Assembly (NCBI GenBank): GCA_025558095.1
Contig: JAIVFI010000024.1
Coordinates: 558,001-622,000 of the forward strand
Reading direction: 5' to 3'
Length of the DNA: 64,000 bases
Source: Hyaloraphidium curvatum SAG 235-1
Taxonomy: Eukaryota; Fungi; Monoblepharomycota
Position 1 is the stretch's first letter; the number at the start of each line of letters is the position of its first letter. Position numbers and translations under genes: made by a program. This document shows, one piece after another, positions 20,215 through 31,407 of the stretch. The notes beneath the pieces were generated by a model that was given only the letters and a program-made list of their open reading frames with translations, was not told the origin of the DNA and did no database searches.

Positions 20215-21557
20215 ATGTCGGTTCCCGAGCACGAGCCCGGCCTCGCGACGATGCCACCGGAAATCTTGCGCCTCTTCATGTCCCGCCTCAGCCTGCCCGA
20301 CCTCTACCGCCTTCGCTTCCTCTGCCGCGCCGTCGGCCCCGCTGCGTCGGACGTCCTCATCGAGCGAACCCGGCTGCACTCGTGGCCAGACGAGGTGGTC
20401 TACCTCATCAAAGAGCTGCGCGGCACGTTCCGTGTGGAGCCCCCGGGGGCCGTATGGCACCTGGAGTTCGGCCCGCTGCGCCCGTTCTCGGCGGGACGGC
20501 TGCTGCGCGGCGCCAGGGAGCCGCACAGGGACGCCGTGCTCCGTTTCTTCCTGGAAGAATCGGTCGCTGCCGCCGGACTGGTCGCCGCTGGGCTGGGGAT
20601 GGACGAAAGGCAGGCCGCGCGGTTCGCCGTGGGGCTCATCGGACGCCGCATCGGCCGCGGCGCTTCGACCGGTACGGCGAAGACTTCTACCACGACGTGC
20701 CCACACCGGAGGAGGAAGCAGACCGCCTGGAAGAATTCATGTGGCACGCTCGCTGCCCCGTGGGCAAGGAGCTTTCCGATGCTGTGGCAAACAGGGTCAT
20801 TGGAGACGAAGGGGAGCTCGAAAAGGGGCTCGAGATCATTGCCCTGTTGGAAAGCGACGACATCGAATCATGGTGCCGCGACGAGCTCGCGTCAGACAGG
20901 CCCCGCATGCTGCGATGGGGCGAGCTCTTTGACGGCCGGGTCCCCGAGGAAGGACTTGTCGGATGCCTCGATTGGATGCTGCGGACGAGCGACGCCCCGC
21001 GGGCCGTCGGTCGGTTCGTCGCTCTAGCGCGGGGGCTCGACGTGGCCGACCGGGCGTTCGTGCTGTCCCGCATGCAACGGACCCGCGAGCAGAGAATGGT
21101 GCTCAAAGGCGCACTCGAGGACGCCGGCGAAGAGGCAGGGGCGGCCATCTTCCGCGGCCTCGGAACGCACCCCATCCTCTTCGGATCCATCCTCGGGGAA
21201 GCAATTCTTGGCATCCTCAAACCCCCAGGCTTCGATCCCACGAAACCCCTTGGCCTCATCGGACCCCCGGGCAACCGCACCCGGCTCTCGGACAGCACCC
21301 GCGTTGCCTCCAGCTTCGTCTAAGCCTTCATCGGCGCGTGCCACCCGGGCAGGGCCCTCGATGCCCTCCGCGCTTTTGCCTCGGCCAACCAGTTGCGTGA
21401 AGCACGGGCCTGGAGGGATGCGCTGGCCGCGGAGAAGGAGGAAGGGAACAAGTGGTACATGTGGGAGACGCTGGATTTGGAGTGGAGGCACCTGGGGCAC
21501 GAGGGGCCGCATCCGTGCAGGGTGCGGTTCGGGATGCTGGAGCAGGTGCTGCTCTGA
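20215..21557 (+). pseudogene. F-box gene with a frameshift and an internal stop
   Basis: F-box LATMPPEILRLFMSRLSLPDLYRLRFLCR; frame change near 20660 (to RFDRYGEDFY...); TAA 21321-21323 followed by about 77 more plausible codons to TGA 21557. Confidence 0.6.
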
Positions 21558-22071: not shown

Positions 22072-23595
22072 ATGTCTGTGGTCCACCGCGGGGCGCGCAA
22101 TGCCGCGCCGGGCGACGGCGCCGAGGAGGAGACAAAGGAGCGGGAGGCCCAGCCGGAGGAGCCTGCAACTCTGGACGGTTACGAGTGGCTCGCACTCTTC
22201 CCGTACATCGACACCTCGGGATCGCCGCCGCCGCTGGACGCGCGCCCGCTGCCGGACCCCGCCGAGGCCTTGCGCCCGTCGAAGCCGCGCGACGTCGCGT
22301 CGATGCTCGCCGCGTGCAAAGACACGGGAAGGCCCGGCATCAGCCTCTTCCTGCGCCTGCTCAAAATGCTTCTGTGGGGGGCCTTTATGTCCAGCCTGTT
22401 CACCTTGGTGCTCCGTTTGCCTTCGATCGTCGCCGCCGTCGTGCTGGCCGCCGGCAGCCCCCGCTTTCCGCCGCGGAACCTCTCGCTGGGCTCCCTGGCC
22501 ATTGCAGTACAGCTAGCTACCTATCCCGCAGCCGCCGCCGTCACCAACCTGCGGCTCGGCCGGAAGATGTTCCTGACGAACCGTGACCGCAAGGCGTTCC
22601 TGGAGTCCTTCATGCCCAGCTGCTCGCCTTCCAACATGGTCACTTGGGCGATCCTGGCACGGGAACGGCCGCGGTCGTCACTTATAGCCCACCGTGCGGG
22701 GCTCGCCAGCTGTACATGCGCAGAGTGCGCGGGCGACGTCAACCGTGCCGACGCCGCCTCCCGGTTCGCCGAGGTTATGACGAACGCTGTTCTGGGCTTC
22801 CTTCTTGTCCCTCTTCTCTTGTGGACACCCGTGGTTTCCATGTCATCCTTTTTCTGGCCCACCCCCTGGGCCCTATCCGCGGCACTGTGCCTGCTCTCTG
22901 TGGTTCCGACCTGGATCGTGGCCGCCGGGCGCTTTTTTCACACCCCGACCATCCCAGCGCTTCGCTACGAAACAAAGCTACGTGTCCGCGCCTCGGTGAT
23001 TCTCCTCGACGATTTTCTGGGCCGGCTGCGCCGCCTCGTGGAGCGGGGCGTCGACGTCGTACACACTCAGAAGGAGCCGTACCGAGACCTCTGCCGCGGC
23101 CTCCTCGATTCGTGGACCTCCTCGGACCGCTTCGCGCCCGCTGCAGCCACCACCACCGTCGTGGTCCAGGGCATCGCCGTGGTCTTGCATTTCGTCCTGA
23201 ACGCCGCCGCGGGCTGCATCACGGCCTGGCAGCTCGCCGACCTCGCCAGCTTCGCCGTCTTCACCGCCTCCCTGCTCGTGCACGTGGCCGCGCAGAACGC
23301 GGGGGTGACGGCTGTCACGGACGTCTGGGTGCAGGCGCGGGACGCGCTCCGTTCCCTGGCTGTCGACTGCGGCCCGCGCGAGCCAAGGACTGCCATCAGG
23401 GACAACGACCGCGTGCTGAGTGGGTTTGTGGAGCGGGCGGAGCGGTTCCGCGCAAAGATTTTTGGCCTCGTTGTGGATTTCGGGATGCTCAGGGGGCTCG
23501 CGGCGACTGCCGTCACGGTCGCGGTGGGCCTGTACGGGATCCTGAGGGGCGCGGGGCTGCGGGTGACGCTGGAGACCTTCTGTCCGTCGGATTAA
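22072..23595 (+). CDS. 7-TM membrane protein, gustatory-receptor/7TMIC-like (paralog 1)
   Basis: intronless 507 aa, about 7 hydrophobic segments, C-terminal AKIFGLVVDFGMLRGLAATAVTVAVGLYGILR; shares motifs with 29947..31407. Confidence 0.7.
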   Translation: MSVVHRGARNAAPGDGAEEETKEREAQPEEPATLDGYEWLALFPYIDTSGSPPPLDARPLPDPAEALRPSKPRDVASMLAACKDTGRPGISLFLRLLKMLLWGAFMSSLFTLVLRLPSIVAAVVLAAGSPRFPPRNLSLGSLAIAVQLATYPAAAAVTNLRLGRKMFLTNRDRKAFLESFMPSCSPSNMVTWAILARERPRSSLIAHRAGLASCTCAECAGDVNRADAASRFAEVMTNAVLGFLLVPLLLWTPVVSMSSFFWPTPWALSAALCLLSVVPTWIVAAGRFFHTPTIPALRYETKLRVRASVILLDDFLGRLRRLVERGVDVVHTQKEPYRDLCRGLLDSWTSSDRFAPAAATTTVVVQGIAVVLHFVLNAAAGCITAWQLADLASFAVFTASLLVHVAAQNAGVTAVTDVWVQARDALRSLAVDCGPREPRTAIRDNDRVLSGFVERAERFRAKIFGLVVDFGMLRGLAATAVTVAVGLYGILRGAGLRVTLETFCPSD

Positions 23596-23939
23596 ATGTT
23601 CCTTCGCGGCGGATCCTGAACGCGCCATTGTAGAACCCGAAACGTGGCCCTCGTGCCCCCTCAGCGCCTACCGTGAATACTCCGGGCTGCGCCCCGTCAC
23701 ATGCACCTCGGACGCGGAACTCGCGAATGCAGAGCCCTTTTTAACGCGTGCATACCTATAGCCTCCGTCGCCATCTGGTTCGTTGGGAGACATCGATCCG
23801 GGGGGAGACATGGCGCGATTCACTGCGGGAGAACACCGGTCCCTGGCCTCGCGGCGCACCACACGCAGCTAGAAAAGTCTTGCGCCGCTGCGATACTTTC
23901 CACCGCTTCCGTCGCGTCCCGCTGCCCCGTCGGCCCGCG

Positions 23940-24734
23940 ATGCCCATCACCATCATCGGCGCGGGCCTCCACCGCACAGGCACCCTCTCCCTCCACGCCG
24001 CGCTCGGCATCCTCGGCCTGCGCTCGCACCACTCCTACACCATGTGCTTCCCTCCCTTGGACGTCCCCGGCCTGGGCCCTGTGGGGCAACGGTTCCCAGA
24101 TGGCCTCCGTTGGTGGATGGACGCGTTTGCGGGCAAGTTTTGCACGAGGGAGGACTACGATGCCTACTTTCGGGACGAGTACGACGCCGCCGTGGACGTG
24201 TCGTATGCCTGGGACTCGATCCACGCCGCGTACCCGGACGCCAGGGTGATCCTCACCGTACGGGACCCGGAATCGTGGTGGGACAGCTACAGGACGATGC
24301 TCGCCCCCCTGAACACTTTGAGGATGACCCGTGCGGCGTCTGAAAAGGTGCCGGGCCGCCCGGTCACGGCGTTCGATTTTGCCGCCACCTATCTGAGCAG
24401 CTTGTTTGCGCTCGACGAGGGGGGGAGGTTCGGCCGCGCGCGCGGGATTCGGCTCTACCACGAATACGCGGCCTCGATCAAGGCCCGGGTGCCCGCGGAC
24501 AGGTTGCTCGAGTTCGACCCCGCGGGTGGCTGGGCCCCGCTGTGCGCGTTCCTCGGCGTGCCCGTGCCCGATGTGCCGTATCCGCGGATCAACGAGCGCG
24601 GGTTCATGGCGGACCTGACTGCGTCTATCCTCGCGCAGTATGAGGGGTGGCTTGGTAAGCCGTTCGCGGAGATCGCGAGGGAGTTTGCGTGGAGGCCGGG
24701 GGTGGACTACGAGGAAGATTGGGAGGAGGAGTAA
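23940..24734 (+). CDS. sulfotransferase-family (Sulfotransfer_4-like) P-loop protein
   Basis: IIGAGLHRTGTLSLHAAL, YPDARVILTVRDPESWWDS and RLLEFDPAGGWAPLCAFLGVPVPDVPYPRIN motifs. Confidence 0.9.
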   Translation: MPITIIGAGLHRTGTLSLHAALGILGLRSHHSYTMCFPPLDVPGLGPVGQRFPDGLRWWMDAFAGKFCTREDYDAYFRDEYDAAVDVSYAWDSIHAAYPDARVILTVRDPESWWDSYRTMLAPLNTLRMTRAASEKVPGRPVTAFDFAATYLSSLFALDEGGRFGRARGIRLYHEYAASIKARVPADRLLEFDPAGGWAPLCAFLGVPVPDVPYPRINERGFMADLTASILAQYEGWLGKPFAEIAREFAWRPGVDYEEDWEEE

Positions 24735-24757
24735 GTGCACGTCCATACATAGATAAG

Positions 24758-27176
24758 TCAAGAGCTTCCCACTGCGCCCGAAAACGACCAGCGGTCCTCC
24801 GGTCGACCCGCATCCTCGTCGTCCCCGACCCGGAGCATCACCATCATCCGCAGCGCCGCCTCCTCGGGAGCCTCCTCGGGGCCCTCGTCGTCCGGCGCCA
24901 CCATCGACCTCGCCGGGTATTCCTCCTTCGAATAGGTTTCGAAGACGCGCACCAGGGGCGCGAACTTGACCTTCCGCCTCGGCCTGGCCGTCCCCTGCGA
25001 CTCCTCGCTGTCCGTCCGCGACACCTTGGTCAGCCCCCGCGACGACACAGACTCTCCCGCGGTCCTCCTGAAGCCGTACTCGGGTATTTCCAGCAGCGGA
25101 TCCGCCGCCTCCCCCCCACCGTGCACCTCGTCCTCCTCCGCACCCTGCCCCTCCTGCCCGCCCTGCCTCCTCACCGCGCAGATCCAGCACGCCCCCTCGG
25201 CCCCCCCGCCCCCGCCGTGCGGACACCGCGCCGCCACCGCCCTTGCCAGCGTGAGTATCTGCACGTCCGCCCTGGCCAGCCGCACCTCGTCCCCCTCCAC
25301 GATCGACCGCAGCACGACCCTGGCCTCCTGGAACGGCGGCAGGTCCGACGCCTGCAGGAGGTCCAGGCACGCGCGCACGTCCGCGGACATGGCGCCGTGC
25401 ACCGCCACCGCGCGCGCCTGGGCGTGCGGCGCGGCGCGGGCGGCGATGTGGCGGAAGCGCTTGAGGACGAGGAGGTGCAGCCAGCTGGCGGAGATGGCGG
25501 CGCGGCAGGCGATCCCGGTGAAGTAGAACAGCCTCAGCCTCTCGGGCCCGAGATCGGAGACGAGGGAGCGGGCCTGCCGCGAGATGACCATGGCGTGCCG
25601 CGAGGCCTCGGCGAAGGAGCGGGAGGAGAACCACACCGTGCGGAGCATGTCGGTTTCGTTCTCGGGCGCCTCGGCGGGGCCGGGGGAGGCGAACTGCGCG
25701 GCGGCGCGGGCGGCGGAGCGGCCCCAGCCGTCGAGGTCCTCGAAGAGCTCCGGGGAGCACAGCGACATGCTCATCTGGCGGGAAAGAATCAGCAGCCTGG
25801 GAAGCGGGGCGACGGCAGACGTCAGTGATGCGTTGGGACCACGATCGGCCAACCCACCCCAGGACGGCCATCCTTTGAGGCACGTCCAAGTTGGGCAGCG
25901 CCCCCGCCAGCTCCGCGATGTGCCCCGTCTCCCCCGCCGTCGCCACGGCCGCCGGCAGCGCCCTCCTCAGGCACTGCACCGCCTCGTACAGGTGGTCCCG
26001 CCTGCGAATGGCCTCTGGCAGGAACGGGTTCCGCGCCAGCCTTTCCAAATACGCCGCGTCGACGTCGTCGCCGCCCGACCCGGGCTGCCGCACCGCGCGC
26101 GCGATGCTGCCTGCCTTTTCCGCCACCTCCTTTGCCAGCAGCACGTCGAGGACGGAGAGCTCCCGCTCGCCGAGCCACCTCCGGAACTCCTCGATCCGTG
26201 TGGCGGCGTACAGCGACATGTGCATGAAGTGGTTGTGCCCCACCGCGGCGACGTCCGAGACGTGCGTGGCGAGGGCGCGGTCCCGCGCGCTCCAGTGCAC
26301 CGGCGGGACCAGCAACGGGTCCAGCCAGCCGAGGTAGTCGCGCGCCGGGAGGCGGCAGTATTCCGGGCGGAGGAGGTCCGCGGGTATCGGCCCGTTGGGC
26401 GGGCGTTCCGTGGGGGCGGGCAGGGTGGCGATGAGCACGGGGGGGATGTTGGCGGGCACGTGGGGGTGGTCCTGGGGCGGGTTCTGCAGCGGGGGCAGGT
26501 TCAGCAGGATCGAGTTGGTGCAGTCCTGGGTGAAGGCGCTCCAGTAGGTGCCGATCCACGTGCCGGTGAACACGAGGTCGTCCAGGCCCCAGTCGGCGGG
26601 GCCCTCGCCCGGCAGCGGCTGGCTCGGGATGCCGCACGCGTCCAGGATGGCGAAGATCTGCTTCAGCATGGCGCGGCCGCCGTGGCCGCGCTCCATGCTG
26701 TGGTCCGCGACCATGACGACGACCACCAGCGCCCACAGCAGCGCCAGGTTCGCCATGGAGTGCAGGCCCTCGCCGGGGCGTGTCCCCGCGGACGGGCTGC
26801 CTCCCCGCGCCGCCTCCTCCGCGTCCGCCCAGAAGCGCTCCAATTCCTCAGTCAGCACCCTGCGCGCCCTCTTCTCCAGCCGCGGCACGGCGTCCTTCAG
26901 CGGCAGCGGACCCGCGCCCGGCGGGTCCGCGCCGCCCGACGCCCCGCGGAGCTTCGCTGCGCCGACCCAGTCCACCGCGGCGCTCAGCACCGGCGCCGCC
27001 AGAAACTGCCGCCACCGCGGGTCCGCCGCCGCGCCCCCGAACCGCAGCGCGTCGTACGCCGCCGCCGTCACGAAGACGGTCCCCACGGGCAGCCCGGAAA
27101 AGAGCGCCGCGCCAAACACCCTCGACGCCTCGTCCGGCGGCTCGTACTCGTCCGCCGGATCGTCGCCGCCCGCCAT
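24758..27176 (-). CDS. fungal transcription-factor middle-homology-like protein with C-terminal PP1-docking motif
   Basis: two exons (intron about 25797-25859); TYWSAFTQDCTNSILLNLPP resembles the Fungal_trans 'FWxxFxxDxxxSxxxGRPP' motif; C-terminal RRKVKFAPLVRVFETYSKEEYPAR. Confidence 0.5.
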
Positions 27177-27798
27177 GCCCCGTGATGAGCACGCGCCGGC
27201 CGGTGGAGTGGGGAAACGGGTTTAGGCGACGAGTCCGACGTTTGTCAGCCGCCTGTCGTCACGCGGACGAGGGCGCATTGGCGCCTCGGATACCGAAACG
27301 CCTCGCATTCCAGTGCAGAGGCCCCCGCCGGAGCACCTTCGTCGATTGCACCTCAGGTGCCCGGCCCCGGCGCCCCGAGATCGATGCACTCCTCGAGCCG
27401 GTCGGCCGCGGGCGGTCTCGGCCCCTTATCCGCATCTCAACGGCCCGAAATCTCTGGATCGTGCGACTCTTCAGGCCCATTAATTCTGCGCAAGAGAAAT
27501 GCACCGGGAACCAGTGTCATGAGTAGCTCCGAGTTCCCGTGGGGAAGATTCGGCGCGTGGGTCCCCCGCGCCAAGGTATCGCCCGCCACGCCAATCCGGA
27601 CCTTGAAGGCGCTGTAGAAGTGACCGGCCATGCTGTCAAATCGTTGCAGCAGCATCGGTCGTTGCAGGAGGCAGTCCGGCCGCCCCTTTCTCGGCCGTGG
27701 AGCGTGCAGGGCGTCGCGCCACGTCACGTCGCCGTCGAATCGAACGATTGGCATTCACCCCATGATGCAGCACGGTGCGTCTCTCACGACTAGCGAGC

Positions 27799-29361
27799 TC
27801 ACGCCGTACCCAGCCGCCCCAGCTCCCCGCGGTTGTAATCGCGCCTCGGCTCCTCCCCGTCCAGGTACCCGTCCCCCGCGGACCCCAGGAACGTCCGCGT
27901 GCGCTGCGGCGGCGCATCCCCGAGGCCGATCACCAGGGGCGCCCTCTTGGCCGGCGCATGCGGGTCCCCGAGGCCGATGACCAGCGGCCCCGTCAGCGCC
28001 GCGGGCACCTCCCAGCCGTCCCCGTCCGACCGCCGTGGCCGGTGTCCCGGCTTGCCCGGCAGCTGCGGCATCTCCCCCGGCCCGTTGCTCCACCCCCTCG
28101 CCATCCTCGCGGCACCGAGCTGCCGCGCCTCCCTGCCCGCCTTGTCCGCCAGCGAGCCGGCCGCGCGGGCCAGCTCCCCCGCCGCGTCCCTCGCGGCGCG
28201 CACCCGCGCGCCGGCGCGGCGCAGGGCGGGGTGCACGGCCGAGTCGAGGTGCGAGACGAGCAGCGCGACGGCGGCGGACAGGGAGGCGGAGATGAGCGCG
28301 TGCAGCGTCGAGGCGAGGTGCGCGGGCGGCGAGTCGTCGTGCATGTCCTCCGGGTCCGGGGGGCGGGGCGAGTCGCACGGGTGCTCGGAGAGGTCCGAGG
28401 CGAGGGAGACGAGGGAGGCGGAGGAGAGGCGGCGCATGTCGGCGGCGGAGGGGCGGCGGGCGGAGCCGTCCGAGGCGCCGCCGGCAACGGTGGGGTCGAG
28501 GGCGTCCAGGAGCTCGCGGCCCGTGGGAGACGAATCGAGGTCGACGCCCAGTGCGGAGAAGGTGCGCTCGGCCAGATCGCGTGCCTCCTCCGCCGAGCGG
28601 TGCTGCAGGGCGGCCACGTTGCCGGCGATCGCCGCCTCGGCGGTGCGCGCGAGGCGCCGGGCCGCGGAGCCGGCATCCTTTGCCGCGCGTGCCGAGTGCG
28701 CGATGGTCTCTGCGCGGGCGTCCAGCCCGGTGCAGATGACGGCGAGCTCGCGGCGGGCGCGAACGCGCTGCCGTGCCAGCAAAATGGTGACCGCGGCATC
28801 GAATGCGCGGCTGGCAGCGGCCAGGTTGGCGTGTGCGGCTGCTGCTTTGGAAGCGAGCCCCTGGAAGCGTTCGGCGAGCGCTGCGGCGATCTCGCGGTCG
28901 TCCCGGCGCGAGGCGTCCTCCGCCGCGTGCGCGTAGACCGCCTGTGCGGCCAGCACCACCGGCAGGCCGAACTCGTTTGCGCGGGCGCGCAGCACCTCGA
29001 TGCGGTCCAGCGTGTGCGCGATGGCCGCCTCGATGTGGTCGACGGCGACGACGGACGCGCGCCGGCGCCGCACCTCCCGCGGCGGTGGCGCGCCCCGCTG
29101 CTCCTCGCCCGGCCCGGCCTGCCCCGCCCCGCCGCCTTCCCCCGCGCCGCCCGCCACGCCGTCGACCTCCGACACCCCCGAATCGCCGCCGTCGCGCCCC
29201 AGCTCGCTGCCGTCCCCGCCGTCGTCGTCGGCATCCCGCGGCACCTCGAACGACCGGCGCCGCGCCTCCTCCGCCGCCCGCCCCGCCTCGGTGACGCCCA
29301 GGGCTGACCGGGCGCGCGGGGGGTGGGCGTCCTCGACGCGAAGGCTCGATAAAATGTCCAT
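27799..29361 (-). CDS. hypothetical helical/coiled-coil Ala-rich protein
   Basis: 520-aa ATG-initiated ORF with amphipathic helical composition; no family recognised. Confidence 0.6.
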   Translation of the reverse strand: MDILSSLRVEDAHPPRARSALGVTEAGRAAEEARRRSFEVPRDADDDGGDGSELGRDGGDSGVSEVDGVAGGAGEGGGAGQAGPGEEQRGAPPPREVRRRRASVVAVDHIEAAIAHTLDRIEVLRARANEFGLPVVLAAQAVYAHAAEDASRRDDREIAAALAERFQGLASKAAAAHANLAAASRAFDAAVTILLARQRVRARRELAVICTGLDARAETIAHSARAAKDAGSAARRLARTAEAAIAGNVAALQHRSAEEARDLAERTFSALGVDLDSSPTGRELLDALDPTVAGGASDGSARRPSAADMRRLSSASLVSLASDLSEHPCDSPRPPDPEDMHDDSPPAHLASTLHALISASLSAAVALLVSHLDSAVHPALRRAGARVRAARDAAGELARAAGSLADKAGREARQLGAARMARGWSNGPGEMPQLPGKPGHRPRRSDGDGWEVPAALTGPLVIGLGDPHAPAKRAPLVIGLGDAPPQRTRTFLGSAGDGYLDGEEPRRDYNRGELGRLGTA

Positions 29362-29946
29362 GTTCTGTGCTCGCTGATGACGATGTTGTCCTGGATGGCT
29401 GGCCGGTCGGCCGGTCCCTTCCCGAAGGACGTCGGACCCTTTTACTCACCGGTCCGACATTGGGATTTGGAGACCGTCCCTACGTTTAGCAACTGTACGG
29501 CCATCGGCTACGCCTGGAGTCGAGTCCGCTTTTGTTGCGTCTGCTGCTTTTCCAGGGGCGCCCGCGCCTCTCTTAAAGGATGCGCGGATGGCTCCAGCAA
29601 GAAGCAGCACATCCCGATCAAAGCCGCCGCATTTTCTCCACCAATCAGCATAGAAGACGTCACCAATGCGGATTCGACGGGCGGAACGCGTTTGCGCCGA
29701 GCGAGGGCGAGGAATCAGACCTACCGACTGGGGCGCGGCCGTAAACAAATCGACGCGTTCCGACGCGTGCAAGATCTCCTTGCGTTCGTTTCGGAGATGA
29801 GCTGCGTTTGACTGTCTTTCTTGAGCATCCGCCAGAGGACCGGACCACAGAGTGTCGCCATTGGCAGAGCCACCCATTCGCATTTGATCCGAGGAAGGTC
29901 GGCGATAGGATCGCCGGCCTCGTCTCGTACGGCCACACAGAAGACG

Positions 29947-31407
29947 ATGGAAGGCCACGGGGCACCTGAAGAGCCCGCGGCCCCGCCCGAAGCGTTCTTC
30001 GTCTCCGCGGCAGAATGGGTCGCGCTGTTCCCGGCGCCGCCCGCGCCCCCGGACGAATCGCGGCTCGAGCCCGGCGCGCCCGACCCCGGCGCGGGCCTGC
30101 GCGCCGCGCCGCTGACCCGCGGCGCGCTTTTCGACGCGCTGCGCGACCTGCCGCTGGCCGCCTTTGTCGCGCGCGCGCAGCTCCTGCTCGGCCCGATCGC
30201 GGTCCACCAGGGCCGCAACCTCACGCTTCCGGCACTGGCGGCGGTTTCCCTCACCGTCCCCATGTGGCTCTTCAACGGCACCGGGACGGAGTTCGGGCGC
30301 GCGCAGCTCGCGGTTGCCACCTTCGCCATCGTCTCCTATTTCGTCTGGTTCCTCGCGACCTCGTGGGCCACCGACCTCGCGGCGCGCAGCCTCGCCGCTT
30401 CGCACCGCTCGTCGTCGCAGTCGTCCGCAGGCGATCTTTCGGCGACACCGTATGCCGGGGTAGCGCGCTGGCGGGCGGTGGCATCCTCGGGCGCGTCGCT
30501 GCTCACGCTGCACCGCAAGGGCGATCCTCTGTGCCCTTGCAGCGATTGCGTCGCCTCGGTGCCGGACAAAGTGGCGGCCGAAGTCGTCGCGTGGACGGCC
30601 TTGGGGACCGTCATCTTGTTTTGTATGCAGATCACCATGGTATGGACGCCGGTGGTCACATTCGGCGCACGGACGTGGTCGACAGCCTGGAGCGCTGTCC
30701 TCGCTGCCGGCTGGTTGGTATGCGCGACAGTCTACAACTCGGTGCAGCACCTTCCCTACGTCGCCCTGTCGCATCCGCCCCTCGAGATCCCGAAACGTCT
30801 GCGCCACCGGGCCGTGCTCCTCGCGCTGCGCGACCTCGTCGCCCGACTCAAGTTCGAAGCCGCCACCGTGAACGGCCCTTCTCTTCTCCCTTCCCCTCTC
30901 TCCTCCGAACCGTACGTCGCACTCCACGCTGCTCTTTCCAGATCCTGGGACAACCAGATCGCCGGGGCCTTCCTCGCCCACGGCCTCCTCCTTGCCTGGG
31001 GCCTGTGGACCGTTGTCCTGGGGGTCGTTTTCGCCTCCACGGGCGCCTGCATCCCCATCTGGATCCCCCTCTACGTGCTCGCGGTCGTCCTCATCCTCCT
31101 GCGCAACCTCCTTCTCATGGCCACGCTCAATTCTGGCGTCGCCTCGGTGCGCGCACTCTACGCCGACGCCGCCAAGGCCCTCCTGGAGCTCGCGACGCCA
31201 GCCTCGCGCGCGCACGCGGGGCTGCTCAAAGCGTACGCCGCGGACGACCCGAGGGGGAGGTGGCTGGGGTTCACGGTGGACTATGGGTTCGCGAGGACCG
31301 CGGCGGTGTCGATGTTCACGATCGCGCTGGGGGTGTGGACGATCCTGAGGGGGTTGGGCGTGGCGTTCGTGGTGGAGAGCGTGTGCGGGGGCGTGCCCGT
31401 CGCTTGA
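29947..31407 (+). CDS. 7-TM membrane protein, gustatory-receptor/7TMIC-like (paralog 2)
   Basis: intronless, 7 hydrophobic segments, C-terminal GRWLGFTVDYGFARTAAVSMFTIALGVWTILRG; shared EWxALFP, HRxGxxxCxCxxC, WTPVV and EPY motifs. Confidence 0.7.
   Translation: MEGHGAPEEPAAPPEAFFVSAAEWVALFPAPPAPPDESRLEPGAPDPGAGLRAAPLTRGALFDALRDLPLAAFVARAQLLLGPIAVHQGRNLTLPALAAVSLTVPMWLFNGTGTEFGRAQLAVATFAIVSYFVWFLATSWATDLAARSLAASHRSSSQSSAGDLSATPYAGVARWRAVASSGASLLTLHRKGDPLCPCSDCVASVPDKVAAEVVAWTALGTVILFCMQITMVWTPVVTFGARTWSTAWSAVLAAGWLVCATVYNSVQHLPYVALSHPPLEIPKRLRHRAVLLALRDLVARLKFEAATVNGPSLLPSPLSSEPYVALHAALSRSWDNQIAGAFLAHGLLLAWGLWTVVLGVVFASTGACIPIWIPLYVLAVVLILLRNLLLMATLNSGVASVRALYADAAKALLELATPASRAHAGLLKAYAADDPRGRWLGFTVDYGFARTAAVSMFTIALGVWTILRGLGVAFVVESVCGGVPVA

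What the first reader, a model, noticed from the sequence alone, without database searches (positions are those of the whole stretch)
22072..31407. Two paralogous gustatory/odorant-receptor-like (7TMIC) channel candidates in a fungus
Seen: both proteins have 7 hydrophobic segments, a long TM4-TM5 loop, a very short TM5-TM6 loop, and a final segment preceded by AKIFGLVVDF or GRWLGFTVDY. They share EWxALFP, WTPVV, EPYxxL, GxCI/GCI, NxGVxxV and ILRGxG...ExxC. Known: this topology and the 'xxGFxxD' TM7a motif characterise insect GR/OR, plant DUF3537 and protist/chytrid GR-like proteins. The animal TY...QF motif is absent here. Inference: members of a diverged, probably expanded family of ligand-gated chemosensory channels, i.e. 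an uncharacterised fungal sensory system.
Basis: partly seen in the sequence, partly recalled or inferred. Interest (0 to 1): 0.8.

Follow-up and report, generated by a model that had tools for sequence, protein, structure and literature searches.

The report
Fungal insect-chemoreceptor-fold channel genes
Two intact genes in the aquatic fungus Hyaloraphidium curvatum encode seven-helix membrane proteins whose predicted shape matches only insect smell and taste receptor ion channels, and they belong to a family of several hundred copies in this one genome, far more than the single such genes reported in two chytrid fungi.

Summary
Gene A (22072-23595, 507 aa) and gene B (29947-31407, 486 aa) are intact, intronless paralogs: 28% identity, E 2e-21.

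- AlphaFold2 models are confident (pLDDT 88.8 and 93.4).
- In an exhaustive structural search, the only whole-chain matches are insect odorant and gustatory receptors: Z 10-13, 300-350 residues aligned. The next hits are partial helical matches. GPCR and rhodopsin folds score Z 3-4.
- Charge distribution gives N-in/C-out topology. Cytoplasmic loops are long, extracellular loops short, TM4-6 are extended, and TM7 is split into 7a, a hairpin and 7b.
- TM7b is the most conserved helix and TM1-5 the most variable, as in insect receptors.

There is no sequence-level link. Pfam and PDB profile searches find nothing, and only 1 of 4 positions of the animal TM7 motif is present.

The family has about 300-470 diverged lineages. 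Every sampled member is from H. curvatum.

Family-specific features are a 62-73 aa first cytoplasmic loop with an invariant H-x6-C-x-C-x2-5-C motif, and a conserved extracellular cysteine pair.

Channel activity, ligand gating and a chemosensory role remain inferred. No expression data could be obtained.

This scan already found the same family on other DNA of this genome. My tests were run independently and agree.

The parts
22072..23595 (+). Gene A: intronless ORF of 507 aa plus stop, 7TMIC-fold family member
   Evidence: ORF. First in-frame ATG, GC3 0.83. AF2 pLDDT 88.8, pTM 0.88. Insect OR/GR are the only whole-chain fold matches, Z 13.0-10.3.
22690..22728 (+). Gene A, first cytoplasmic loop: conserved His207, Cys214, Cys216, Cys219 (H-x6-C-x-C-x2-C), a putative metal or redox site
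   Evidence: Invariant columns in the 37- and 116-sequence alignments. The motif is present in 115 of 116 members. Its cytoplasmic side follows from the positive-inside count. Metal binding is inferred, not tested.
23386..23478 (+). Gene A: TM7a cytoplasmic helix (aa 439-458) and beta-hairpin (aa 459-469) carrying the G-L-V-V-D-F stretch
   Evidence: DSSP of the model. Gly465 is invariant.
23479..23550 (+). Gene A: TM7b (aa 470-493), the putative pore-lining helix and the most conserved helix of the family
   Evidence: DSSP. Column entropy 1.69 against 2.9-3.2 for TM1-TM5.
29947..31407 (+). Gene B: intronless ORF of 486 aa plus stop, from the first ATG; the frame is open from 29812
   Evidence: ORF. 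Start and GC3 0.86. AF2 pLDDT 93.4, pTM 0.91. OR/GR are the only whole-chain matches, Z 12.9-9.4, and the next hit is Z 5.3-7.8.
30511..30549 (+). Gene B, first cytoplasmic loop: His189, Cys196, Cys198, Cys201
   Evidence: Invariant in 116 sequences. Spacing statistics.
31198..31281 (+). Gene B: TM7a (aa 418-432) and beta-hairpin (aa 433-445) with G-F-T-V-D-Y
   Evidence: DSSP. Gly441 is 97% conserved.
31282..31353 (+). Gene B: TM7b (aa 446-469), the putative pore helix
   Evidence: DSSP. Conservation.

Best explanation
Genes A and B are two intact, distantly related members of a Hyaloraphidium curvatum family of several hundred intronless genes. They encode proteins with the seven-transmembrane ion channel (7TMIC) fold of insect odorant and gustatory receptors.

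Shown here: intact coding frames; paralogy; family size; confident models whose only whole-chain structural matches are insect OR/GR channels; N-in/C-out topology; long cytoplasmic and short extracellular loops; cytoplasmic extensions of TM4-TM6; a split TM7 (7a, hairpin, 7b); highest conservation in TM7b, the TM5-TM6 turn and TM7a, with the lowest in TM1-TM5.

Inferred by analogy with solved OR/GR channels: subunits assemble as tetramers through the cytoplasmic helices; TM7b lines a central pore; the variable TM1-TM5/TM6 bundle of each paralog forms a distinct ligand pocket, so the repertoire acts as ligand-gated channels that sense the environment.

Family-specific additions, function inferred only: a 62-73 aa first cytoplasmic loop with an invariant His-Cys3 motif, probably a structural zinc or redox site; and a conserved cysteine in the TM5-TM6 turn plus one in the extracellular C-tail, probably a disulfide.

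My odds: 7TMIC fold about 0.85, ion channel about 0.5, chemosensory role about 0.4.
For: Paralogy.
Family size: 89 and 99 scored matches out of 653 and 718 first-look candidates in the 31.9 Mb genome. The profile search gave 470, 418 and 301 clusters (50% identity) at E<=1e-3, 1e-10 and 1e-30. 10 of 10 sampled clusters are H. curvatum hypothetical proteins, and 16 of the 38 locus ORFs are identical to, or contained in, a listed representative.
Models: pLDDT 88.8 and 93.4.
Exhaustive VIA search of 48,161 PDB representatives: for A, ranks 1-7 are all insect OR/GR (Z 13.0-10.3, 299-338 aligned), then partial hits of 204 residues or fewer. For B, ranks 1-8 are all OR/GR (Z 12.2-9.9, 302-351 aligned), then Z 7.8 with 74 aligned.
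Second look at B: 18 OR/GR entries at Z 12.9-9.4, next Z 5.3; A2A GPCR 3.4, xenorhodopsin 3.9.
Foldseek: the top 14 (A) and top 18 (B) hits are all OR/GR.
Topology: K+R per protein 32.4 on the predicted cytoplasmic side against 1.4 outside; IL 62-73 aa against EL 5-16 aa.
Conservation pattern.
Sequence-only language-model neighbours include DUF3537 (4 and 7 of 30 hits, 0.93) and 7tm_7 clusters (0.88-0.89).
These structural features are the six defining 7TMIC features listed in bioRxiv 10.1101/2023.08.30.555482.
Own knowledge: the AlphaFold2 weights were trained on PDB entries up to April 2018, and the first OR structure (6c70) was released 2018-08-22 (date), so the fold was not memorised.
Against: There is no sequence-level homology to any known 7TMIC. 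No Pfam hit for 37 members at E<=10. The family profile finds only noise in PDB sequences. PF08395 and PF12056 find nothing in the genome.
Only 1 of 4 positions of the animal TM7 motif is present.
Foldseek E-values are 0.009-0.8 with TM-scores 0.3-0.46, none below the 0.001 threshold. VIA rmsd is 5-6 A, and the tool warns that Z below about 13 can be a common arrangement for helical bundles.
The models rest on within-species paralog alignments only.
No tetramer model was made and there are no functional data.
H. curvatum is described as non-flagellated (own knowledge), so chemotaxis is not an obvious use.
Confidence: 0.55

Rival explanations
1. The proteins do have the 7TMIC fold but are not ligand-gated chemoreceptors. 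They might be constitutive or otherwise gated channels, or transporters. They might instead be a hypervariable membrane-protein family used for self/non-self recognition or defence, with the His-Cys3 loop as the real regulatory input.
For: The fold alone shows no function. Plant DUF3537 and vertebrate PHTF proteins share it and have no known chemosensory role. The invariant cytoplasmic His-Cys3 motif has no counterpart in the aligned OR/GR structures. The organism is non-motile (own knowledge).
Against: The size (hundreds), the star-like divergence (median 27% identity) and the conservation pattern (variable ligand-pocket helices, conserved pore and anchor) are those of insect chemoreceptor repertoires.
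Confidence: 0.3
2. This is a lineage-specific seven-helix family that only resembles 7TMICs by convergence, or through a generic helical-bundle arrangement favoured by the predictor. It is not homologous to insect receptors.
For: No detectable sequence similarity. Modest TM-scores and rmsd of 5-10 A. The tool's caution about helical bundles.
Against: Every one of the top 7-18 hits, in two aligners and two independent models, is an OR/GR. They are colinear over 80-90% of the target, with a clear gap to the next fold. Specific hallmarks are reproduced: the split TM7 with hairpin and the extended TM4-6. Sequence-only embeddings independently point to DUF3537 and 7tm_7.
Confidence: 0.1
3. The copies are non-functional or selfish DNA: retroposed or element-borne ORFs kept open by chance in a GC-rich genome.
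For: The copies are intronless and dispersed. The GC-rich genome produces many long spurious ORFs.
Against: Most copies are full-length open frames without stops despite ~27% identity. Gene-like GC3. Invariant residues are maintained across 116 sequences. No shared flanking or upstream DNA motif.
Confidence: 0.03
4. The proteins are GPCR-like or rhodopsin-like seven-helix receptors.
For: Seven membrane helices.
Against: Predicted N-in/C-out topology. An A2A receptor scores Z 3.4 and a xenorhodopsin Z 3.9, against 9.4-12.9 for OR/GR. No GPCR Pfam family is hit.
Confidence: 0.02

Closest known systems
Insect odorant and gustatory receptor channels (Orco 6c70, MhOR5 7lic, AgOR28 8v3d, AaOR10 8v02, BmGr9 8vc1/8vc2, DmGr43a 8jm9, Gr64a 8jme)
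   Same: Whole-chain fold match, Z 9.4-13, 300-350 residues. N-in seven-helix topology, long TM4-TM6, split TM7 with hairpin, conserved TM7b against variable N-terminal helices, and a large divergent repertoire.
   Different: 7-12% identity and no profile-level similarity. The TM7 motif is absent (1 of 4 positions). There is an extra ~60-80 aa conserved N-terminal region (EW.ALFP), a 62-73 aa IL1 with the His-Cys3 motif, and a conserved Cys pair. The genes are intronless and the host is a fungus.
Chytrid GRLs (SpunGRL1, SpalGRL1; Benton et al. 2020, PMC7746228)
   Same: Candidate 7TMICs in an early-diverging fungus. There too only one of the four TM7 motif positions is conserved.
   Different: Those are single genes per genome that were found by BLAST similarity to GRLs. 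Here there are several hundred genes with no detectable sequence similarity to GRLs.
Class-B (PHTF-like) eukaryotic 7TMICs (Himmel et al. 2023, bioRxiv 10.1101/2023.08.30.555482)
   Same: [quoted passage not shown] IL1 here is 62-73 aa.
   Different: The relationship was not tested. No PHTF Pfam domain was hit. That paper notes that its screen did not recover the earlier chytrid (Class-A) proteins and that its 'Fungi' covers Chytridiomycota and Blastocladiomycota only. The text I searched does not mention Hyaloraphidium, and I found no description there of a large fungal expansion; I did not read the whole paper.
Plant DUF3537 proteins (PF12056)
   Same: Nearest named family by sequence-only language-model features (0.93; 4 and 7 of 30 hits). 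Same predicted architecture, according to the literature.
   Different: No PF12056 HMM match in the proteins or the genome. Plants have 4-12 members.

Membership tests
7TMIC superfamily (structure-defined, features i-vi of Himmel et al. 2023) | (i) Seven TM helices with the characteristic OR-like packing | tested here: met
   Insect OR/GR are the only whole-chain matches for both models: Z 13.0-9.4, 299-352 aligned, and the next fold is at Z 5.3-9.4 with partial coverage. Foldseek's top 14-18 hits are all OR/GR, but at E 0.009-0.8.
7TMIC superfamily | (ii) Intracellular N-terminus, extracellular C-terminus | tested here: met
   Positive-inside count over 116 sequences: K+R 7.6/8.1/8.9/7.8 in N-term/IL1/IL2/IL3 against 0.42/0.47/0.05/0.47 in EL1/EL2/EL3/C-tail. 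This is a prediction, not an experiment.
7TMIC superfamily | (iii) Extracellular loops shorter than intracellular loops | tested here: met
   EL1 5, EL2 16, EL3 7 aa against IL1 73, IL2 72, IL3 62 aa (family means).
7TMIC superfamily | (iv) Long TM4, TM5 and TM6 helices extending into the cytoplasm (anchor domain) | tested here: met
   Model B has helices 247-275 plus 280-306, 322-366 and 372-415. Model A has 266-290 plus 294-325, 336-350 plus 356-379, and 385-432.
7TMIC superfamily | (v) Split TM7: cytoplasmic TM7a and membrane TM7b | tested here: met
   A: H439-458, hairpin 459-469, H470-493. B: H418-432, hairpin 433-445, H446-469.
7TMIC superfamily | (vi) N-terminal re-entrant helix (TM0) | tested here: inconclusive
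   A hydrophobic helix directly precedes TM1 (A 88-100, B 69-85), and structural alignments start there against OR residues 1-16.
7TMIC superfamily | Tetramer with a TM7b-lined pore; ion conduction | not testable with these tools
   No multimer prediction and no electrophysiology. Indirect only: TM7b is the most conserved helix.
Animal GR/GRL and insect OR families (sequence-defined) | Match to Pfam 7tm_7 (PF08395), 7tm_6 or Trehalose_recp, or reciprocal sequence hits to a known GRL | tested here: not met
   No such Pfam hit in A, B or 37 family members at E<=10. PF08395 finds nothing in the genome. The family profile against all PDB sequences finds only aquaporin noise at E 0.45.
Animal GR/GRL family | TM7 motif (T/S)Yhhhhh(Q/K/E)(F/L/M) | tested here: not met
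   Only the Thr (B Thr458, 97% conserved) fits; the family has T-[IV]-x-h-G-L-W-x-x-L-R. The motif is described as diagnostic but not definitive.
Plant DUF3537 | Match to PF12056 | tested here: not met
   No hit in the proteins or the genome. There is only embedding similarity of 0.93.
Class-B PHTF-like 7TMIC | 7TMIC core with a long IL1 between TM2 and TM3; sequence or phylogenetic affinity to PHTF-like proteins | tested here: inconclusive
   IL1 is enlarged (62-73 aa) but far shorter than I recall for PHTF. Affinity was not tested because no referenced PHTF-like sequences were available.
GPCR / microbial rhodopsin 7TM receptors | N-out topology and GPCR or rhodopsin helix packing | tested here: not met
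   N-in prediction. Z 3.4 (A2A receptor) and 3.9 (xenorhodopsin).

The most novel reading that the evidence does not exclude
A non-flagellated planktonic fungus has independently built a repertoire of several hundred ligand-gated 7TMIC chemoreceptor channels. That would be the largest reported outside animals and comparable with insect OR plus GR repertoires. The channels would carry a family-specific cytoplasmic His-Cys3 (zinc or redox) module that couples intracellular state to gating. Large chemoreceptor arrays based on this fold would then have evolved at least twice in opisthokonts.
Probability: 0.35. Interest if true: 0.85.

Novelty: new variant of a known kind. Interest (0 to 1): 0.68.

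Why it matters
In the literature I could search, 7TMICs outside animals are small families of unknown function, and the chytrid fungi described have one candidate gene each.

A repertoire of hundreds in a fungus with a 32 Mb genome would be a second, independent case of massive diversification of this channel fold. It would give a tractable microbial system for asking what non-animal 7TMICs sense and how they are gated.

It would also bear on how early-diverging fungi perceive their environment. No paper in the held library links Hyaloraphidium with gustatory or 7TMIC receptors.

Tried and rejected
- Word-index protein search with A and with the 37-sequence profile returned only 3 H. curvatum proteins. 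Candidate lists overflowed, so this says nothing about other species.
- Pfam on A, B and 37 members found nothing relevant.
- The family profile against PDB sequences found only aquaporin Z noise.
- PF08395 and PF12056 scans of the genome found nothing. The controls also stayed silent, so this is weak evidence.
- The metagenome scan failed for the broad alignments because no conserved stretch was available. With a six-member subfamily alignment, none of the 600 pattern matches encoded a relative. This is a weak test based on two peptide patterns.
- A search for a shared upstream or downstream DNA motif among 38 paralogs found only GC-rich k-mers and no flank conservation.
- GPCR and rhodopsin readings were rejected on topology and fold.
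- Tandem duplication of A and B was rejected: patristic distance about 4 substitutions per site, and their nearest relatives lie on other contigs.
- Direct profile-profile comparison with known GRL, DUF3537 or PHTF alignments was left out.
- Distances within the His-Cys3 site and between the two conserved cysteines were not measured, because model coordinates are not exposed.
Full report
**What is there**

The finding spans two single-exon ORFs on the + strand.
- Gene A is 22072-23595 (507 aa).
- Gene B is open from 29812. Its first ATG is at 29947 (486 aa, stop at 31405-31407).
- Neither gene has another in-frame ATG upstream.
- GC at codon position 3 is 0.83 for A and 0.86 for B. This equals the adjacent Sulfotransfer_4 gene (0.86). 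The long antisense ORFs typical of this 65-72% GC region show the mirrored pattern.
- The two proteins are paralogs: BLASTP 28% identity, E 2e-21, over the C-terminal ~300 residues.

**Organism and family**

- The only named database relatives are hypothetical proteins of Hyaloraphidium curvatum, a monoblepharid early-diverging fungus.
- In the window's own 31.9 Mb assembly, A gives 89 scored matches out of 653 first-look candidates, and B gives 99 out of 718. Most are full-length open frames of about 500 aa without stops.
- A profile of 37 paralogs, read against 1.84 billion representative proteins, finds 470 clusters (50% identity) at E<=1e-3, 418 at <=1e-10 and 301 at <=1e-30.
- Ten of ten sampled clusters are singleton H. 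curvatum hypothetical proteins. Sixteen of my 38 locus ORFs are identical to, or contained in, a listed representative.
- The family therefore has roughly 300-470 lineages that differ by more than 50%. I could only see the best 150 hits, so members in other species cannot be excluded.
- A scan of JGI metagenomes with two subfamily peptide patterns found no relative. This is a weak test.
- Median pairwise identity among 116 members is 27%, with long terminal branches.
- A and B lie about 4 substitutions per site apart. Their nearest relatives are on other contigs (55% and 67% identity), so they are neighbours by position, not a local duplication.
- There is no shared flanking or upstream DNA motif, which argues against element-borne copies.

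**Fold**

- AlphaFold2 with the paralog alignments gives confident models: A has pLDDT 88.8 and pTM 0.88; B has pLDDT 93.4 and pTM 0.91.
- VIA-align aligned each model to all 48,161 PDB representatives, without any Foldseek prefilter.
  - For A, ranks 1-7 are all insect odorant or gustatory receptor chains: Z 13.0-10.3, 299-338 residues aligned, rmsd 5.0-6.1 A, covering model residues ~83-494 and nearly the whole target. After them come partial helical matches of 204 residues or fewer.
  - For B, ranks 1-8 are all OR/GR: Z 12.2-9.9, 302-351 aligned. The next hit is Z 7.8 with 74 aligned, and no other fold reaches Z 8.
- A second look at Foldseek's list for B gives 18 OR/GR entries at Z 12.9-9.4, then Z 5.3. 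An A2A GPCR scores 3.4 and a xenorhodopsin 3.9.
- Foldseek itself ranks only OR/GR in the top 14 (A) and top 18 (B). Its E-values are 0.009-0.8 and its TM-scores 0.3-0.46, below its significance line.
- The ESM Atlas shape search gives TM 0.54-0.55 to three unannotated eukaryotic clusters: arthropod, echinoderm and green alga.
- The tool cautions that Z below about 13 can be generic for helical bundles. What counts here is that the matches are exclusive to one family, colinear over the full length, separated by a gap from other folds, and reproduced with two models.
- From my own knowledge, the AF2 weights predate the first OR structure, which was released 2018-08-22. The fold was therefore not recalled from training.

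**Hallmarks**

I checked the six features that define 7TMICs according to bioRxiv 10.1101/2023.08.30.555482.
- Seven helices with OR-like packing: met.
- N-in/C-out: met by a strong positive-inside signal. K+R per protein is 32.4 on the cytoplasmic side against 1.4 outside.
- Short extracellular loops (5, 16, 7 aa) against long intracellular loops (73, 72, 62 aa): met.
- TM4-TM6 extended into the cytoplasm: met.
- Split TM7 with an intervening beta-hairpin: met. A has H439-458, hairpin, H470-493. B has H418-432, hairpin, H446-469.
- TM0: a hydrophobic helix precedes TM1 and aligns with OR N-termini, but I could not verify that it is re-entrant.

Conservation follows the OR/7TMIC pattern. Mean column entropy is 1.69 for TM7b, 1.51 for the TM5-TM6 turn, 2.2 for the hairpin and 2.28 for TM7a, against 2.9-3.2 for TM1-TM5.

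**Sequence level**

- No Pfam family is hit by A, B or any of 37 members: not 7tm_6, 7tm_7, Trehalose_recp or DUF3537.
- The family profile finds only noise among PDB sequences.
- PF08395 and PF12056 find nothing in the genome.
- Only the Thr of the animal TM7 motif is present. Benton et al. report the same for the Spizellomyces GRLs (PMC7746228).
- Sequence-only language-model features put DUF3537 (0.93) and several 7tm_7 clusters (0.88-0.89) among the nearest named neighbours, beside TMEM39. That is a lead, not proof.
- I therefore file the proteins under the structure-defined 7TMIC superfamily, not under the GR/GRL or DUF3537 families.
- Class A against Class B is open. The enlarged IL1 recalls the PHTF-like Class B.

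**Family-specific features**

- His-x6-Cys-x-Cys-x2-5-Cys is invariant in IL1 and present in 115 of 116 members. A and B have the x2 spacing. By the topology it is cytoplasmic, so a structural zinc or redox site is the likeliest reading. This is inference.
- A Cys in the TM5-TM6 turn and a Cys in the C-tail are both present in 112 of 116 members. In both models the strand that begins at the TM5-TM6-turn Cys is drawn beside a strand a few residues before the C-tail Cys, and both lie on the predicted outside. This fits a disulfide and independently fits N-in/C-out.
- There is a conserved N-terminal EW.ALFP region of about 60-80 aa before TM0.

**Mechanism proposed**

Tetramers are held together by the cytoplasmic TM4-TM7a helices. 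TM7b lines the pore. The variable TM1-TM6 bundles act as paralog-specific ligand pockets. The repertoire as a whole works as ligand-gated sensory channels. Only the monomer architecture and the conservation pattern are shown here; everything else is inferred from solved insect channels.

**Limits**

- No expression data.
- No multimer model.
- No profile-profile comparison with known 7TMIC families, because no referenced sequences were available.
- No access to model coordinates.

**Context in the literature**

- Known fungal candidates are one GRL each in two Spizellomyces species.
- The 2023 survey counts only Chytridiomycota and Blastocladiomycota under 'Fungi'.
- No held paper connects Hyaloraphidium with these receptors.

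**Context in this scan**

Earlier notes of this scan report the same family on other pieces of this genome, with about 350-450 members and an insect-receptor-like fold. I treated them as leads. My own searches, models and counts agree. They add the topology count, the conservation profile, the cysteine statistics and the finding that A and B belong to distant branches.

Noticed in passing
window 23937-24734 (+): Between the two receptor-like genes lies an intact single-ORF Sulfotransfer_4 gene (PF17784, E 2.7e-49), with GC3 0.86.
   Followed up: partly
window 24758-27176 (-) and 27799-29361 (-): Two long, Ala/Arg/Gly-rich ORFs between genes A and B. The parts I scanned (24758-25852 and 27799-29361) have no Pfam match at E<=0.01, and their reality as genes was not assessed. 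Many overlapping ORFs here are by-products of the ~70% GC content.
   Followed up: no
window 20215-21024 (+): An ORF with a weak F-box / F-box-like match (E 7e-4, below the curated cut-off), just upstream of gene A.
   Followed up: no
G000 contigs C22:532816-535534, C14:38285-41822, C9:734008-739157, C2:1040100-1084344, C29:112065-118495: Elsewhere in the genome, family members do occur in tight clusters, some head-to-head. This contrasts with A and B, which are neighbours but only distantly related.
   Followed up: no
G000:C45:38903-40340 (-), loci L005/L007; also C10:84572-86053, C18:635022-636560, C15:613270-614817: Some copies match in two pieces or with one internal stop. These are candidate pseudogenes, frameshifts or rare intron-containing members.
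   Followed up: no
proteins P0005, P0009, P0067, P0108 (772, 739, 788, 710 aa): Some annotated family members are 200-300 aa longer than the ~500 aa core. They could be fusions or gene-model mergers with neighbouring ORFs; I did not examine them.
   Followed up: no
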